Positions 2,757-33,398 of a stretch of 64,000 bases of DNA are shown piece after piece. Each line of letters opens with the position of its first letter. The first letter of the stretch is position 1. Position numbers and translations under genes: made by a program. Origin of the DNA: Orbicella franksi (lineage: Eukaryota); assembly GCA_964199315.1 (NCBI GenBank), contig OZ116706.1, positions 7,626,001-7,690,000 on the forward strand, in the 5' to 3' direction. Below the pieces are notes generated by a model, which worked only from the letters and a program-made list of their open reading frames with translations, had not been told where the DNA came from and ran no database searches.

Positions 2757-5700
2757 CTGAGCACACTACTTGACTGCCAGAAACCAGCTAGCACCACGTA
2801 TGGCGAGGCAACCGTCCATGATGAGCTTCTGTTCATTGTCACACACCAAGGTATACTATGTATTCAAACATTTTGGGAAGTTTCCCTCCATGAGGCCCTT
2901 TGGCGTGTTGCAAAATTAAAGTAGCTAGTTGCCAGCAAAATTCATCATCTATTCTGTGATATCTTCTCAGGCCTTCAAATTTAAACTTTATTTTATTTTT
3001 GACATCCTTTTTGAATAGATAATTATGCAGTTGACATAAGTTTGATGCCAAGATTTGTTCTAAAGACTTACAAGTTATATTTATCTAAATCTATTCCTTT
3101 AGCCTATGAATTGTGGTTCAAACAGATTATCCATGAGCTGGACTCCATCAGAGATATCTTTACCCTTGAGGAACTGGTGAGCTACACCTGTAATTACATT
3201 TTAATTTTATGAGGTTTCTGGAGGTATTGATCTTTGCAATTTTTTAAGAGGTGGTGCAGGGTAAAGGTCAAGTTTTATTATTTTTTTTTTAACTTCTCTC
3301 CCTGAGACCTACTTTTAGATTTGCTCATTTTAGACTGAAACCTTGTCTTGCATGTGCAGGTTTGCACACAGATCTCTTAATCTGGAGGCCCATGTAGCAT
3401 AAAACAGTGAACTGTGAAGTCTTTTGGACCATTAAAAACCTATTAGGCCAGAGAAAAAATACATAACTGTTAATCTACTGGCTGGAATGGAAGGACTGCT
3501 GCATACCAGCACTTTTTTACCTGACTTTTGTTACCCTCTTGAGTTTATACACTTAAGTACACAAATTTACTGTTATAAAACATCTATGGCAGACATTGAA
3601 TCGTTTAAATGCCTGTTTATCAGAAGCAATTAACTGTGGACAATTGTTTTGGTTTAAAGGGTATGGATGAAAGAAAGATGCTTGTTTTAATCTCAAGGCT
3701 GGGCCGCATTGTGCAGATTCAAAAAGTGTGTGATCTTATTTGTTTTGTATTCTTGCTAACAGTTTTTCAATTTAACTTTTGTTTTGGGGTTGTAAAAATG
3801 GCATACGTTTGCTATGCTTCATAAGTTTATGTTCCAGGTTTTTTTTTATGACCCCTGGAAAAAAAAATGCGAAACGAAACTGCCAGTAGTCACTTTATCC
3901 TAAGATTATCAGGTGACTTGACTGACTAGAAAATGGTTGATCTGATTGGTTAAGCAGCCCGTTGTGGGGTGGGGCTGTTAATCAAAGAAGTCACTCATTT
4001 CTGCATGATCTGTGTTTCTTGACAATCTGTAAAGGAGCACTAGCTGCTCCTAATCTAATGAATGTAACACGTGTGATTGACTTTGTAAAGTTGTGAAAAT
4101 TCACTGATGTTTATCCTTTTTTGAAATTCTGTAGCTGTTGAGGGATCAGATCATGATTTTGGAGACCATGACTCCACTGGACTTTATGGAATTCAGGTCA
4201 GTGACTCTCATGTATACAGCATACAGTGTTGCACGGTCAAAGTTACTCTATAGGGCTTGTTTTTGTTACGCTAAAAACTGGAAAACTGAAAATTTGACAA
4301 CCTGCCTGTCAAAATAATGTACGGTTGCCATGGTAACCCAGGATCCTTGAACAATGATGCAGCTGAATCCTATCCTATTTCGAACTCTCAGAGGAAACGA
4401 AAAGTAGTTCGAGATAGCGGGAGTTCAAAAATCTAACGGAGAAGGCTCTGAGTTTCAAATAACAGAAGCTCGATTACGAATTATTTCTAACTCGTACCGA
4501 TTTGTTCCTACTAGATAACTAATGGGGAAAAACACCATATTTTAAGAGTTCAAAGTTGGTGTTGGGCATAAAACTCCCTGGCCAGTGTGGAAAGGGTTAA
4601 AGATCACATGGAGAATCGAACTAACATTTTCATTGTGTGTTGTCCTTCTTCTTGTCTGTAGAGATTACTTGGCCCCTGCCTCTGGATTTCAGAGCCTTCA
4701 GTTCAGGCTGATTGAGAATAAATTAGGCATCAATAAGGTATGAGGGACAAGTTGAAATACCTTTCCTCTCAAGTCTTGTTTATAATTATCAATTCATTCA
4801 TTGTAAACGATGAACTTGAAAAATTTAGACTAAACTTTTCAAGATACGCAAACCGTGACCTAGCTCGTTTAACTACAATTGGACTTACATGTAGAGAAAC
4901 GAGGTGAGGGGGGCAGTTTTCTTTTACAAGTGACACGGTAATAAATCTGTTTAGTACCGAGAAGAGAACTTGTGAATGGTCCTTAGTTCTTTCAACCTTA
5001 AAGAGTAATATGCACTTAATTACAAGTACCCTTATTGACAACAATAATATTATATACAGATATGATTAAAAGACCAATAATTTACGTTCTCTTATTTCTA
5101 TGACAGAGTCACAGAATACGTTACAATTATCAGGATTACAGGTTAGAGTGAATAGCATGTTGTGTAAACTCGCTGGATTGTTATTTATTTATTTTTTAAA
5201 ATTATATACCATGTAAAATGTAATTGCTTGGTTTATGTTATAACGCAACACCTCTAGGCAAGTGCAAAGTGGTCACCATGTTCCAAATCATTCTCAGGGT
5301 GTTCCCATTCTGAATTTCATTCGTCTTTGACTGGAAAATCCAAAAGCATGAATCGTTAAAGAATTAGTCGATGTATGTTGTGGCACTATACTTCGCGGAT
5401 TTTTTGGTGTCATTACGTTTTTCTTTTTGGGTGATATTTTGTCTTTTTCAATTTTCCAGCAAAGCATTTGACTCCCAAGACGGAAAGCAACTGGAAGAAT
5501 CAGAAAGCACACCCTCACTACTAGAACAAGTTCAGGTTTGTATTTTTTATAGATCACATCAATGAACTATCACTGACGCGAAGTTCTTAATTCTGACCAT
5601 CTGGAATGGAGCAATAAGAACACTTTCCTTTAGTGACCGCTACTCAATATGAGCAACGGAACTCACCTTACAGTTTCGGTTGCTCTATAGGTCTGGAATA

Positions 5701-29700: not shown

Positions 29701-32700
29701 TGTATCATATGACCTATAAGCGACTACAGTTTACTGCAAGGACTGTGTTTTGTGCTCGCCAGTATTTATTTATATTAGCTGTATCTCTGCTGGACCCTGT
29801 GATACATGCACATTTCCTTTTCTGCTCCCTCAATCACCTCCTCCTAAAAACTGCCCTAAAAACTTTTTGCATAATTTCAGTATTTCACTGATTGGGTTAG
29901 CTAGAGTGATGGTGTTGTGCCTGCCCAATATTTTGCTCAGCGGCATTACAGGTGCATACAAGTATGTAAAGTATGTATTGAACATGTACTCACCAACAAC
30001 TTCCACACTGTTCAATGATTATAATGAGCAGGACATGAAAAAGAACACAAACAAACAACGAAGAACAAATGAGCAACAACAATTTTAAATCAGCTATCAT
30101 GGTACATGTAATATGTATACTAACAATTTTAAAATTAACATAACAAGTAACGATTAAAAACAATGTACCTTTCCCTGATTTTTCACTGCTGTCACTTTTC
30201 CTTCTTTTCTCCTGAGCAAAATAGATTTATAAAAATCTTAGTACATTGTACATTGTACATGGTGCTTTGGAATTTTTCTTTAAATTTGCCATGTAAAGGT
30301 TTGAATTTAATGTATGACTTGACTGATAAAAGCTGTCACTAGTTTTCTTAACACTAATCTAGAGAGCATTGTTTTAAAATAAAGAGCCGTCTTCAGAATA
30401 TTACAGAACTAACAAAAATGATACAGAAGCTCCAGGAGTTTCTTAAGGCAGTGTTTCATGGTAGCTAAGCTTGGTAAACTTGTTCAACTTACAATAGAGG
30501 AGTTCATGCTCTAAGGAGCATTATGGGTAATCAGGACAAGATTGCAAAGAAACAGAGCAGCAAAATGTACATTGTTTTTCATATTTCCGTTCTAGAGTTT
30601 CATTTTCGAGAAAAAACTTTTACTGTAAATAGACAAACCCCCTTTCTACATTTACTAGCATTTTTAAGTAGATTGAGCTACAGTGTAGGCATTTAGCCTA
30701 CTTACATTGTTTTATCAGAGTAACAGAGATGTTATTTTTGGAATTGAATGGCTAATGCCTGATCATATCATTCAGTTTTAATAGTAAAAGAATTCCTATG
30801 CCCATAACAATCACTTGATTGGCTCAAAAACGCAGGAAAACCTAGAAAAGGGGTTTCTCCATCTACAGTATATGTTTCATCTCCACATGTGAAATCAGAA
30901 TGGAAATATAAAGATAAACATTTGTTTTATGGCTATGCTTCTTTGTAAATTTGCCCTGATTACCCATTATGCCCCTTAAAGCGTGAACTCCCCTATATTG
31001 CTATGATATGGAGACTACAGCCGTGTGAAACAATGTGAAGGGTCTTGTACAGGAAACAAACATTTACTAGCCAGTTTTAAACCCCTAACAATAATCATTA
31101 ATTATTCTTTAACAACCAGTTTCTAACTAATTAGCAAATGAAGCAGTTAGGGGTACTGAAAGTTACTTGCTCTGCATAGGATGCTATTCCATCAAAGGTT
31201 ACTACACAGTATTGTGGATCAAGTTGCCTAACAAAGTGCACTACTCAGCAGTTTACCCTAGTTTACAACAGTATGGTACAATGTTCAGTACTTACTATTA
31301 TTATATGGCTAGCTCAGCGAGTGGGCAAGATGAATCAAACCCTGTGCTGTGATTGGCTATCGAGCAGGCAAGATGGAGCTATCTTAGTTAGCACTAATTT
31401 AGCAGCTCCAGGGTATTATATCAACTTGTTACTGACAATACTAGCAGTAAGTACATGTACATATGTACAACCTACCAGTCATGGTTATGTGGTGTTGCAG
31501 AAGCATTCAGTTTTAATGTACAGCTGCAGTCTTCAAGTGTTTGATAACTGTTTATGAGAAGGCTGTGATCTTTCTGGCTTCCTCTTCTTAGAAATTCTAT
31601 ACATGCAGTGGCATCAACAAAATTTTACTACATACAGTGTACACCTGTATTATATTTCTGTCAATGTTATTGATTTAACTAAATATATACTTACAGTGTA
31701 GTTGACTAGAGTACCTGGACAGGGATTAAGTTCTGCTACTGAGGCCATCTAATCCCTAATGTATTTAAAGTCCGCACTTAAGGTTACAGTTAACAGTAGC
31801 CTACACCACCAGCATTCAGTACAGTAAAAAAAACTACATGTATGACTGAGACAATGTCCATGATTAAATTCTTTACCTAGGTATTTAGTGGTGGTTTACT
31901 TTCCTCCTTCAACAAGAAAACCAACAAACACGAAAAAATAAAAAAATAAAAAAATAAAAATAAAACTAAAAATGACTGAGGCAAGTTCCTTCCTTTTTTT
32001 TTTTCACCTGGGACTAAATGTCTCCTGACAAAAGATGCAGCCCCTATAGACTAACTTGTGACGAACTACAACCTCACCTAGAGGTGTATAAATTTAAAAA
32101 TATACAAGTTCCCAGTTGCTCCATTCTATATAAAGTACAGTTTAGTGAGAACTAGGGACTGTCATATTTAAAGGCCATAACCTACATGTATAACACCTAT
32201 CATGGCTGAGTATGTTTGATGAGCCCTTGATGTTACAGATCAACTTGTCCGTTGTTCATGAATACAGTTCACGTACAAATAAACAAATTTATTTATGGGT
32301 GCAAAGATCAAGGCAACACAAGATTCAAAATGGGTTTTGACAAAACACTGACCCCCTACTGACCCAGAATCTTGGAAATTGTAGGCAAGCTAAATTTATT
32401 ACTGAACTTGAATTGGCCTTATTGATAGTTCTGGGCTATATTTTGTTTTTCCCATTGATTTTATGGGGGGTCAGTTGGGGGGTCAGTAGGGAGGTCAGAA
32501 GGGGGTTCAACAGGGGGTCAGAGTTTTGTCGAAACCCATTCAATTAACTAATGGCAGCCCTGGTTATGGGCTGGAGTGTAGACTTTACTACTAAGAGGCC
32601 ATTTATCAGCTAGTATCTACCTCAAACAATGGCCCAAACTAAAATGCATTAAGTAATGGATTTCTTGATTACACTACAGTAAAAACACACACACACACAC

Positions 32701-33398
32701 ACACCTTTAAACTCTTCAGGAGTCCAATCAGAGAATTGATTTATACCATATACAGCTGCCCCATTTAGTTCAGACTCTCTTGCATTTAACCTGGCATGTC
32801 TCGCAAGGCTTTCCTACAAAAAACGTGACAGGAAAAGGCTGTAATTTGTGTTCACATTTTTCCCCCTATTAAACTAGCAACTTTTCACTTTCATTTTCGA
32901 TACCCTCTGAAATGGTCTCTAAAATTAATGCCACTTAAATGATAGCGCAGTATTCATTACATTCTTTTTGCCTCGCTCAAATCAATGCTATCAGACAAGC
33001 TAGAAGGTTTATAATTTAGCACAGTTTAACCTAATCACCCTACAAACAGAGCCTCTCCTTACGGTACATCACTCCAGTACTAACAATGTTTTCTTCACAA
33101 TAATTTGCAGGCTGATAAACAAACCATATGACATGCAACTTAAACTATTTCTTCACAAGACAATCAAGCAAGGTACTACCTTAAAAACAGAAAGACGTCT
33201 GTTGTATTCCTCCGGATCATTTATGTATGTCCTGTTGTGTGTTTGGACATATTTTTTGAACATCAAATGCAGGTTTGCCTCGTCTGTTTCGTTATAAACA
33301 TGAACACGTTTCAGCTCGTCCACAGTTGAGCCCTGTGTGGACAGCGTATAGACCACATGGGCTAGCCAAAATAAGAAGAATACGTTCGAAGACGGCAT
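23742..33398 (-). CDS. CTSO: Cathepsin O-like papain-family (C1A) cysteine protease, complete, ~356 aa
   Basis: Twelve GT-AG exons: 33398-33180, 32813-32705, 31596-31476, 30211-30169, 30007-29994, 29455-29302, 28959-28889, 28001-27957, 26768-26677, 25495-25421, 24745-24653, 23776-23742 (1071 nt, in frame). Signal peptide, I29 prodomain ([14 protein letters not shown]), VKNQGKCGSCWAF (oxyanion Gln, catalytic Cys), INHAV (His), WIVRNSWG (Asn). CTSO-like motifs [11 protein letters not shown] and [13 protein letters not shown]. Confidence 0.93.
24063..24260 (+). mobile_element. tRNA-derived SINE remnant
   Basis: Head gggaggtacggtggcgtaatggtt (box-A-like) followed by a degenerate body. Confidence 0.5.
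24838..25330. mobile_element. Tc1/mariner-type MITE in a CTSO intron
   Basis: Degenerate inverted ends tacacttgaacctc...gaggttcgaccgta with internal repeats of ctctacaacggccac. Confidence 0.55.
30515..30975. mobile_element. TTAA-type (Kolobok/piggyBac-like) MITE
   Basis: Inverted ends GGAGCATTATGGGTAATCAGG...CCTGATTACCCATTATGCCCC with ctaa/ttaa flanks. Confidence 0.5.
32685..32704. repeat. (AC)10 microsatellite at a CTSO splice donor
   Basis: On the minus strand the exon ends AAAG|gtgtgtgtgtgtgtgtgtgt. Confidence 0.9.

What the first reader, a model, noticed from the sequence alone, without database searches (positions are those of the whole stretch)
2757..33398. TDO2 and cathepsin O as convergent neighbours, as in human 4q32: possible very old microsynteny
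Seen: TDO (+) and a CTSO-like gene (-) are adjacent protein-coding genes, tail to tail, separated only by the U5 cluster and repeats. Established: human TDO2 (+) and CTSO (-) are adjacent and convergent on 4q32.1. Inference: if the organism is a cnidarian, this linkage dates to the cnidarian-bilaterian ancestor, which suggests shared regulation or other constraint between two functionally unrelated genes.
Basis: partly seen in the sequence, partly recalled or inferred. Interest (0 to 1): 0.7.

Follow-up and report, generated by a model that had tools for sequence, protein, structure and literature searches.

The report
Ancient TDO–cathepsin O gene neighbours
In this stony-coral genome the tryptophan 2,3-dioxygenase and cathepsin O genes sit tail to tail exactly as in vertebrates, and the pairing probably dates to the common ancestor of corals and humans; it is a good new example of an already known kind of conserved gene neighbourhood.

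Summary
The window comes from a scleractinian coral. It carries an intact, single-copy TDO gene (+; stop at 9172; its first two coding exons lie 2.3-2.5 kb left of the window). It also carries an intact, expressed cathepsin O gene (-; ATG 33398, stop 23742).

The two genes converge. Their stop codons are 14.6 kb apart. Between them lie seven U5 snRNA genes, a 4-kb satellite of 23-bp units, and no ORF with a Pfam match among the eight tested.

Orthology is solid. The protease nests in the cathepsin O clade (100/100 support), and the clade's branching follows animal phylogeny.

- **Adjacency seen directly, convergent:** bowfin (610 bp apart) and the coral Desmophyllum (3.7 kb apart).
- **Adjacency inferred from consecutive or near-consecutive RefSeq accessions:** four Acropora species, Montipora foliosa, two hemichordates, and a cockroach (six numbers apart).
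- **Pair broken:** sea anemones, amphioxus, abalone (2.07 Mb apart on one chromosome), and probably Lingula and Bulinus. No TDO lies beside Hydra's cathepsin O, and no Hydra TDO turned up.

Retention from the cnidarian-bilaterian ancestor with several losses is the best reading (about 0.8). Shared regulation remains untested. About 600 such pairs are already catalogued, so interest is moderate.

The parts
2757..9172 (+). Tryptophan 2,3-dioxygenase (TDO) gene, in-window part: coding exons 3-16
   Evidence: Exons: 2757-2850, 3103-3176, 3660-3725, 4135-4196, 4662-4737, 5107-5141, 5460-5535, 5954-6061, 6870-6926, 7222-7276, 7862-7919, 8368-8447, 8713-8803, 8908-9172 (stop 9170-9172). Exons 1-2 lie at window -2486..-2461 and -2381..-2315 (locus L049). 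All introns are GT-AG and the ORF is 429 aa. PF03301 hits occur only at this locus in the genome. The protein is 88-90% identical to Pocillopora and Desmophyllum TDO and 53-61% identical to bowfin, amphioxus and cockroach TDO. RNA runs hold 63-71% of the sampled words of 8300-9300.
5107..5141 (+). 35-nt TDO mini-exon (encodes [11 protein letters not shown] plus a split Ser codon)
   Evidence: Found by translation and by matching the coral orthologues P0384 and P0399. Joining the flanking exons directly shifts the frame. A related transcript-like contig (L015) shows exactly that skipped form, which ends in a premature stop.
9173..23741 (.). Spacer between the two stop codons (14,569 bp)
   Evidence: Eight ORFs picked from it have no Pfam match. 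Only the edges align with the 3.7-kb Desmophyllum spacer: 9925-10217 (66% identity over 318 nt) and about 23399-23741 (likely CTSO 3'UTR). The Desmophyllum locus has no U5 gene, so most of this spacer is a lineage-specific insertion.
11377..21375 (-). Cluster of seven U5 spliceosomal snRNA genes
   Evidence: Rfam RF00020 hits of 85-95 bits, full length, at 11377-11498, 16449-16570, 17389-17510, 18020-18141, 19376-19497, 20580-20701 and 21253-21375.
12026..16069 (.). Tandem satellite, 23-bp unit, about 176 copies
   Evidence: Tandem Repeats Finder, 82% matches between copies. The long repetitive ORFs across it are products of the repeat.
23742..33398 (-). Cathepsin O (CTSO) gene, 12 coding exons, 356 aa
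   Evidence: Exons (listed high to low): 33398-33180, 32813-32705, 31596-31476, 30211-30169, 30007-29994, 29455-29302, 28959-28889, 28001-27957, 26768-26677, 25495-25421, 24745-24653, 23776-23742. All introns are GT-AG. The product has a signal peptide-like N-terminus, an I29-type propeptide and a C1 domain with the Gln/Cys (NQGKCGSCW), His (INHAV) and Asn (VRNSWG) motifs. RNA contigs and raw reads show joints 28959/29302, 29456/30169 (through the micro-exon), 30210/31475 and 32812/33179. The protein sits in the cathepsin O clade with 100/100 support.
29994..30007 (-). 14-nt micro-exon encoding the catalytic cysteine (CGSC-W)
   Evidence: Required by phase and by homology. In four RNA runs the 13 letters between joint sides 29456 and 30169 are the reverse complement of this exon (table 5c).
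43060..54181 (-). GON-domain, mucin-like gene, the 5' neighbour of CTSO on the same strand
   Evidence: A Pfam GON hit at 43676-43960. Collinear translated matches link it to the gene directly upstream of CTSO in Nematostella (L005) and Actinia (L056), with 71-75% identity in the GON exon (gene calls). This side of CTSO is therefore conserved in sea anemones even though the TDO side is not.

Best explanation
This is an ordinary pair of functional housekeeping or metabolic genes. One is the single-copy coral orthologue of TDO2. The other is the coral orthologue of cathepsin O. They are transcribed towards each other.

The neighbourhood is homologous to the vertebrate TDO2-CTSO arrangement at human 4q32. 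The two genes were already 3'-to-3' neighbours in the cnidarian-bilaterian ancestor. The pair has survived in stony corals, hemichordates, vertebrates and, nearly, a cockroach. It was broken independently in sea anemones, amphioxus, gastropods and probably a brachiopod.

I put the probability that the adjacency is ancestral at about 0.8.

The most likely reason for survival is inferred, not shown. I propose that breaks between the genes are selected against because regulatory DNA or a chromatin domain of one gene extends into or across the other. That is the mechanism proposed for conserved ancestral microsyntenic pairs. The constraint would act on linkage, not on spacing, because this coral tolerates a 14.6-kb insertion of U5 genes and satellite between the genes.

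The stated confidence is for ancestral adjacency together with a selective constraint.
For: Gene identity:
- Intact gene models.
- TDO is single copy.
- CTSO splicing is confirmed by RNA.
- CTSO lies inside a 100/100 clade made only of named cathepsin O sequences, and the clade's branching mirrors animal phylogeny.
- The top 135 BLASTP hits belong to the cathepsin O set. Vertebrate CTSO scores 225-265 bits; the best sequence outside that set scores 194 bits.

Direct convergent adjacency:
- Bowfin, 610 bp apart.
- Desmophyllum, 3.7 kb apart.
- Cattle CTSO 43,364,999-43,381,605 and TDO2 43,386,894-43,403,747 (PMC8645200).

Indirect adjacency, from consecutive or near-consecutive RefSeq accessions on the same chromosome or scaffold:
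- Ptychodera XP_070553706 / 707-708.
- Glandiceps XP_077984007 / 008.
- Acropora palmata ..935 / ..936.
- A. millepora ..368 / ..369.
- A. digitifera ..171 / ..170.
- Montipora foliosa ..273 / ..274.
- A. muricata ..559 / ..563.
- Periplaneta ..512 / ..518.

In sea anemones the 5' neighbour of CTSO is conserved but the TDO side is not. This fits a break exactly at the pair in that lineage.

Survival in about four phyla is what Irimia et al. 2012 take as a sign of constraint (PMC3514665).
Against: - The pair is not adjacent in Nematostella. There is no TDO within 10 kb and another gene intervenes.
- In Actinia, an MFS transporter and another gene follow CTSO, and TDO sits on another scaffold.
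- In Branchiostoma floridae, TDO is flanked by a short-chain dehydrogenase and a phosphatidylserine decarboxylase gene.
- In Haliotis rufescens the genes are 2.07 Mb apart.
- In Lingula and Bulinus they are on different scaffolds.
- Hydra shows no TDO in the 10-kb flanks of CTSO.
- Montipora capricornis accessions are not consecutive.
- The hemichordate, insect, Acropora and Montipora evidence rests on accession order, not on coordinates. In Ptychodera, TDO is more than 10 kb from CTSO.
- No genome-wide permutation was run.
- No conserved non-coding element beyond UTR-proximal stretches was found between the two corals.
- The pair is 3'-3', whereas conserved pairs are enriched for 5'-5' orientation.
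- Co-expression was not examined.
Confidence: 0.5

Rival explanations
1. The adjacency is ancestral but is kept by neutral survivorship, not by selection. The ancestral spacer was short (0.6-4 kb in bowfin, cattle and Desmophyllum). Corals, hemichordates and vertebrates rearrange slowly, so a few ancestral neighbour pairs persist by chance. No shared regulation exists.
For: - The pair has been lost in many lineages.
- It survives mainly in genomes known for conservative gene order.
- The spacers are short.
- The spacer tolerates a 14.6-kb insertion here.
- The orientation is 3'-3', with no shared promoter.
- No conserved non-coding block lies outside UTR-proximal sequence.
Against: Independent survival in about four phyla of one particular pair is improbable if each lineage keeps only a few percent of ancestral adjacencies. 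That figure is my own rough estimate, not a computed result. Irimia et al. treat such multi-lineage pairs as constrained.
Confidence: 0.3
2. The adjacency arose independently (convergence). The two genes only share an ancestral linkage group. Local rearrangements brought them next to each other separately in stony corals and in vertebrates.
For: - Both genes are on one chromosome but far apart in abalone (2.07 Mb).
- They are on the same chromosome but not adjacent in Nematostella.
- The pair is absent in amphioxus and sea anemones.
- By my rough estimate, about a dozen coincidental shared adjacencies between a coral and human would be expected genome-wide.
Against: - The same 3'-3' orientation occurs in coral and bowfin.
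- Consecutive accessions in two hemichordates and near-consecutive ones in a cockroach would require three or four independent origins.
- Complex and robust corals both have the pair.
- In sea anemones the break lies exactly at the 3' end of CTSO while the other neighbour is kept.
Confidence: 0.15

Closest known systems
Vertebrate TDO2-CTSO locus (human 4q32.1; cattle chr17; bowfin)
   Same: The same two orthologous genes are immediate neighbours and are transcribed convergently. This was seen directly in bowfin. Cattle coordinates show them adjacent. The human arrangement is from my own knowledge of the genome map.
   Different: The coral spacer is 14.6 kb and is filled with seven U5 snRNA genes and a satellite, against 0.6-5 kb in vertebrates. 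The other flanking genes are not shared. Here a GON-domain mucin-like gene lies 5' of CTSO, and two intron-less GPCR-like ORFs with retroelement ORFs lie 5' of TDO.
Conserved ancestral microsyntenic pairs (CAMPs) of Irimia et al. 2012 (PMC3514665)
   Same: Two unrelated genes have been kept as neighbours in several deeply diverged animal phyla. About half of the roughly 600 reported pairs predate bilaterians.
   Different: This pair is 3'-3', whereas CAMPs are enriched for 5'-5'. Neither gene is a developmental regulator. I could not check whether this pair is already in their list, because their supplementary tables are not held. The full-text search found no paper that holds TDO2, CTSO and synteny together. 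Related term searches turned up none that discusses the pair.
Genomic regulatory blocks (target gene plus bystander genes)
   Same: This is the proposed reason for retention: regulatory DNA of one gene embedded in or beyond its neighbour makes breaks harmful.
   Different: No conserved non-coding elements, no developmental target gene and no long-range regulatory landscape were shown here. This is an analogy for the mechanism, not a demonstrated membership.

Membership tests
Tryptophan 2,3-dioxygenase (Pfam PF03301; TDO2 orthologue) | Sequence matches the Trp_dioxygenase family over its length, and the nearest relatives are named TDOs | tested here: met
   Exon-wise PF03301 hits occur only at this locus. 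The 429-aa model is 88-90% identical to coral TDOs and 53-62% identical to Nematostella, cockroach, amphioxus and bowfin TDO over nearly its full length.
Tryptophan 2,3-dioxygenase (Pfam PF03301; TDO2 orthologue) | Conserved active-site motifs: distal His in ..[11 protein letters not shown].., proximal His in WRYNH.., and the GTGG(S/T)SG loop | tested here: met
   All three motifs are present in the translated model. Assigning them to catalytic roles rests on my knowledge of human and Xanthomonas TDO structures, not on a test made here.
Tryptophan 2,3-dioxygenase (Pfam PF03301; TDO2 orthologue) | Enzyme activity (Trp to N-formylkynurenine) | not testable with these tools
   Only expression is indicated. 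RNA runs hold 63-71% of the sampled words of 8300-9300.
Cathepsin O (orthogroup within papain family C1A) | I29 propeptide plus a C1 peptidase domain with the Gln-Cys-His-Asn catalytic residues | tested here: met
   The model has NQGKCGSCW, INHAV and VRNSWG. There is a PF00112 hit at this locus. Orthologues carry PF08246 and PF00112.
Cathepsin O (orthogroup within papain family C1A) | Falls inside the cathepsin O clade in a gene tree, apart from other C1A peptidases | tested here: met
   In a maximum-likelihood tree of 45 proteins, the window protein plus 23 named CTSO sequences (including mammals and lamprey) form one clade at 100/100. The cnidarian and bilaterian subclades each have 99% support.
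Cathepsin O (orthogroup within papain family C1A) | Closer to vertebrate CTSO than to cathepsins L, K, S, V, H or F | tested here: met
   Vertebrate CTSO gives 40-44% identity and 225-265 bits. The best sequence outside the cathepsin O set gives 34% and 194 bits. The Oculina orthologue scores at most 163 bits against any solved C1A protease, and 115-143 bits against cathepsins L, K, H and V.
Cathepsin O (orthogroup within papain family C1A) | Separation from named metazoan cathepsins L, F and W placed in the same tree | tested here: inconclusive
   The 21 outgroup sequences carry no names. Three were checked and resemble cruzipain and cathepsin L, F and S types.
Conserved ancestral microsyntenic pair (sensu Irimia et al. 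2012) | Non-paralogous genes adjacent in several deeply diverged phyla | tested here: met
   Direct evidence: this coral, Desmophyllum, bowfin and cattle. Indirect evidence by accession order: Acropora (four species), Montipora foliosa, Ptychodera, Glandiceps and Periplaneta. The pair is absent in sea anemones, amphioxus and abalone.
Conserved ancestral microsyntenic pair (sensu Irimia et al. 2012) | Conserved relative orientation | tested here: inconclusive
   The orientation is 3'-3' in both corals and in bowfin. It is also convergent in abalone despite the 2-Mb separation. It is unknown for hemichordates, the cockroach and Acropora.
Conserved ancestral microsyntenic pair (sensu Irimia et al. 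2012) | Retention exceeds chance in a genome-wide permutation; evidence of co-regulation or of regulatory elements in the neighbour | not tested
   This needs whole-genome annotations, expression atlases and chromatin data. Only UTR-proximal conservation was seen between the two corals.

The most novel reading that the evidence does not exclude
TDO and cathepsin O form a 3'-3' regulatory unit that has been under selection for more than 600 million years. For example, an enhancer or a domain boundary of one gene may lie within or beyond the other. Linkage, not spacing, would be the constrained property. This coral would then show that the unit tolerates a 14.6-kb snRNA-gene and satellite insertion at its centre.
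Probability: 0.3. Interest if true: 0.55.

Novelty: new member of a known kind. Interest (0 to 1): 0.4.

Why it matters
Deeply conserved neighbour pairs of unrelated genes are the main evidence that gene order in animals can be functionally constrained. Most catalogued cases are head-to-head pairs or surround developmental regulators.

A convergent pair made of a metabolic enzyme and a lysosomal protease, retained from corals to humans yet broken in sea anemones, amphioxus and snails, offers a natural experiment. Expression and chromatin contacts of both genes can be compared between lineages that kept the pair and lineages that lost it.

The find is modest. The phenomenon is well known, roughly 600 pairs are already listed, and this pair may already be in those lists.

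Tried and rejected
1. Exon-by-exon reciprocal search of the genome with gar CTSO. The short exons of this locus score below the longer exons of cathepsin L-like paralogues, so bit scores were not comparable. I replaced this with full-length models, BLASTP and a tree.
2. A profile made from a bacterial TDO scaffold plus the coral exons (alignment A1). MAFFT scattered the fragments, so I abandoned it.
The last exon worked. It gave a rotifer transcript (L020) that served as a full-length TDO query.
4. Context look-ups for Acropora palmata CTSO, Montipora foliosa CTSO and Ptychodera TDO isoform X2 were not on record. Those lineages therefore rest on accession order only.
5. A direct join of TDO exons 4662-4737 and 5460-5535 breaks the frame, which briefly suggested a pseudogene. 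I rejected that once the 35-nt exon at 5107-5141 was found.
6. I first took the end of CTSO to be near 24.6 kb, where an in-frame stop follows the penultimate exon. The true last exon is 23776-23742.
7. Supplementary tables of Irimia 2012 and Simakov 2022 are not held. Whether the pair is already catalogued could not be checked.
8. I looked 20 kb upstream of TDO for other human 4q32 neighbours (ASIC5, GUCY1). Only two GPCR-like ORFs and retroelement ORFs were seen, judged by eye from the translations with no family search run.
Full report
**What is in the window**

The window is G000:C9:7626001-7690000 of a 497-Mb assembly. It contains no N.

TDO. PF03301 (Trp_dioxygenase) matches only four exons in the whole genome, all in this window on the + strand. 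I built a model using the coral TDO proteins P0384 and P0399 and canonical GT-AG sites. It has 16 coding exons and encodes 429 aa.
- Fourteen exons lie in the window, from 2757-2850 to 8908-9172.
- The ATG exon and the second exon lie at window -2486..-2315, in the flanking locus L049.
- A 35-nt exon at 5107-5141 is needed to keep the frame.

CTSO. On the - strand I built a model with 12 exons encoding 356 aa, from ATG 33398 to stop 23742.
- It has a papain-type propeptide and the catalytic Gln/Cys, His and Asn motifs.
- A 14-nt micro-exon (30007-29994) carries the catalytic Cys.
- RNA contigs and raw reads from four runs show four of its splice joints, including the micro-exon letters.
- TDO sequence is also held by RNA runs.

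The spacer. The stop codons are 14,569 bp apart.
- The spacer holds seven U5 snRNA genes on the - strand.
- It holds a 4-kb satellite of 23-bp units.
- Eight ORFs picked from it have no Pfam match.
- An independent metagenome contig reproduces the TDO-U5-satellite junction at 99.3% identity.

Its left coordinate is only the first in-window exon.

**Organism**

- The closest named CTSO is from Oculina patagonica (82% identity), and an unnamed transcript-derived protein is 90% identical.
- The closest TDOs are from Pocillopora and Desmophyllum (88-90%).
- Runs labelled coral metagenome hold the DNA at full word share.
- In the tree the protein is sister to Oculina, inside stony corals.

The organism is a scleractinian coral, probably of the robust clade. 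That last assignment rests on these nearest relatives and on my own knowledge of coral taxonomy.

**Orthology**

- A search with the Actinia orthologue returned 120 best hits. Nearly every hit that carries a descriptive name is called cathepsin O or cathepsin O-like, and none is named after another cathepsin. The hits range from cnidarians to mammals.
- In a maximum-likelihood tree, the window protein and 23 named CTSO sequences form one clade at 100/100 support on a long stem. Cnidarian and bilaterian subclades each have 99% support and follow the species tree.
- BLASTP gives 225-265 bits (40-44% identity) to vertebrate CTSO. The first sequence outside the cathepsin O set scores 194 bits.
- The Oculina orthologue reaches at most 163 bits against any solved papain-like protease, including cathepsins L, K, V and H.
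- Caveat: the tree's outgroups are unnamed sequences of cruzipain and cathepsin L, F and S type. They are not named animal paralogues.
- TDO orthology is straightforward: one copy, one family, and top hits named TDO wherever a descriptive name is given.

**Gene order elsewhere: direct evidence**

Pair adjacent:
- Bowfin: CTSO is followed 610 bp later by TDO on the opposite strand.
- Desmophyllum pertusum: TDO is followed 3.7 kb later by CTSO on the opposite strand. No U5 gene lies there.
- Cattle: published coordinates put CTSO and TDO2 5.3 kb apart (PMC8645200).

Pair not adjacent:
- Nematostella: no TDO within 10 kb, and a 114-aa gene follows CTSO.
- Actinia: an MFS transporter and another gene follow CTSO, and TDO is on another scaffold.
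- Hydra: no TDO in the 10-kb flanks.
- Branchiostoma floridae: TDO lies between a short-chain dehydrogenase and a phosphatidylserine decarboxylase gene.
- Haliotis rufescens: same chromosome and still convergent, but 2.07 Mb apart.
- Lingula and Bulinus carry the two genes on different scaffolds.

**Gene order elsewhere: indirect evidence**

To my knowledge these are issued in genome order within one annotation run. The tight numbering of Hydra's identical CTSO-like copies fits this.

| Species | CTSO accession | TDO accession |
|---|---|---|
| Ptychodera flava | XP_070553706 | XP_070553707 / 708 |
| Glandiceps talaboti | XP_077984007 | XP_077984008 |
| Acropora palmata | ..936 | ..935 |
| A. 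millepora | ..369 | ..368 |
| A. digitifera | ..170 | ..171 |
| A. muricata | ..563 | ..559 |
| Montipora foliosa | ..274 | ..273 |
| Periplaneta americana | ..512 | ..518 |

- Montipora capricornis is an exception, with numbers far apart.
- In Ptychodera the neighbour must lie more than 10 kb away.
- Chance cannot plausibly give consecutive numbers in so many genomes.
- This remains an inference until coordinates are read from the annotation files.

**Reading the pattern**

The pair occurs in complex corals (by accession order) and robust corals (seen directly), in two hemichordates, in vertebrates, and nearly in an insect. It is missing in sea anemones, amphioxus, a gastropod and probably a brachiopod.

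One origin before the cnidarian-bilaterian split, followed by several losses, needs fewer coincidences than three or four independent origins with matching orientation.

Support comes from the other side of CTSO. The GON-domain mucin-like gene at about 43-54 kb (- strand) is collinear with the gene just upstream of CTSO in both Nematostella and Actinia. Sea anemones therefore kept that neighbour and lost only the TDO side. This looks like a break at the pair in their lineage.

I put ancestral retention at about 0.8 and convergence at about 0.15.

**Mechanism**

Nothing here shows why the pair persists. Irimia et al. (PMC3514665) report nearly 600 such pairs, half of them pre-bilaterian. They attribute the pairs to co-regulation or to regulatory elements lodged in neighbours. 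Their conserved pairs are enriched for 5'-5' orientation, unlike this 3'-3' pair.

- Between the two corals, only the 3' coding ends and UTR-proximal stretches of the spacer align.
- The rest of the spacer in this species is a lineage-specific insertion of U5 genes and satellite. Close spacing and overlapping 3' ends are therefore not required.
- I favour a linkage constraint from regulatory or chromatin entanglement (about 0.5 overall).
- Neutral survival of a short-spacer pair in slowly rearranging genomes is the main rival (about 0.3).

**Novelty**

Full-text searches found no paper that discusses TDO2-CTSO linkage beyond listing the two genes together. The supplementary lists of the systematic surveys are not held.

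The phenomenon is well known, so this is a new or unremarked member of a known kind. Interest is moderate.

Noticed in passing
window 29994-30007 (-): The catalytic cysteine of cathepsin O is encoded on a 14-nt micro-exon, and RNA from four runs includes it. In bowfin one translated match spans window-protein residues 149-219, so the same stretch appears to be a single exon there. In Nematostella the match starts at residue 165, at the micro-exon's first codon, so the micro-exon appears fused to the following exon there.
   Followed up: partly
L015 (metagenome contig Ga0099817_1130697), positions 3-1281; compare window 4737/5460: This is a transcript-like contig of a related anthozoan TDO. It joins the exons flanking the 35-nt mini-exon directly, which gives a frameshift and an early stop (..GINKQSI*). 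It is probably an exon-skipped isoform.
   Followed up: partly
window 11377-21375 and L055: The seven-copy U5 snRNA cluster and the satellite of 23-bp units are absent from the equivalent 3.7-kb spacer of Desmophyllum. They are therefore a recent insertion into an old gene pair. As a curiosity, a cattle gene table lists a U6 snRNA at the 3' end of CTSO (PMC8645200).
   Followed up: partly
The Rfam scan at gathering thresholds listed only the seven U5 genes in the whole window.
   Followed up: no
window 43060-54181 (-); L005 540-5863; L056 2334-7976: The GON-domain mucin-like gene upstream of CTSO is collinear, exon by exon, with the gene upstream of CTSO in Nematostella and Actinia. This is a second conserved neighbour pair, at least across hexacorals.
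   Followed up: partly
L048 4461-5378 (+) and L049 3940-4893 (-), that is 5-16 kb left of the window: Two intron-less ORFs that look like rhodopsin-type GPCRs, plus ORFs that look like retroelement reverse transcriptase and endonuclease, lie upstream of TDO. They were judged by eye from the translations, with no family search run. No counterpart of the human neighbours ASIC5 or GUCY1 was seen.
   Followed up: no
Hydra vulgaris proteins: Besides the CTSO gene on the 64-Mb chromosome, Hydra has one cathepsin O-like protein sequence listed under three closely numbered accessions on another chromosome. This suggests a local tandem triplication.
   Followed up: no
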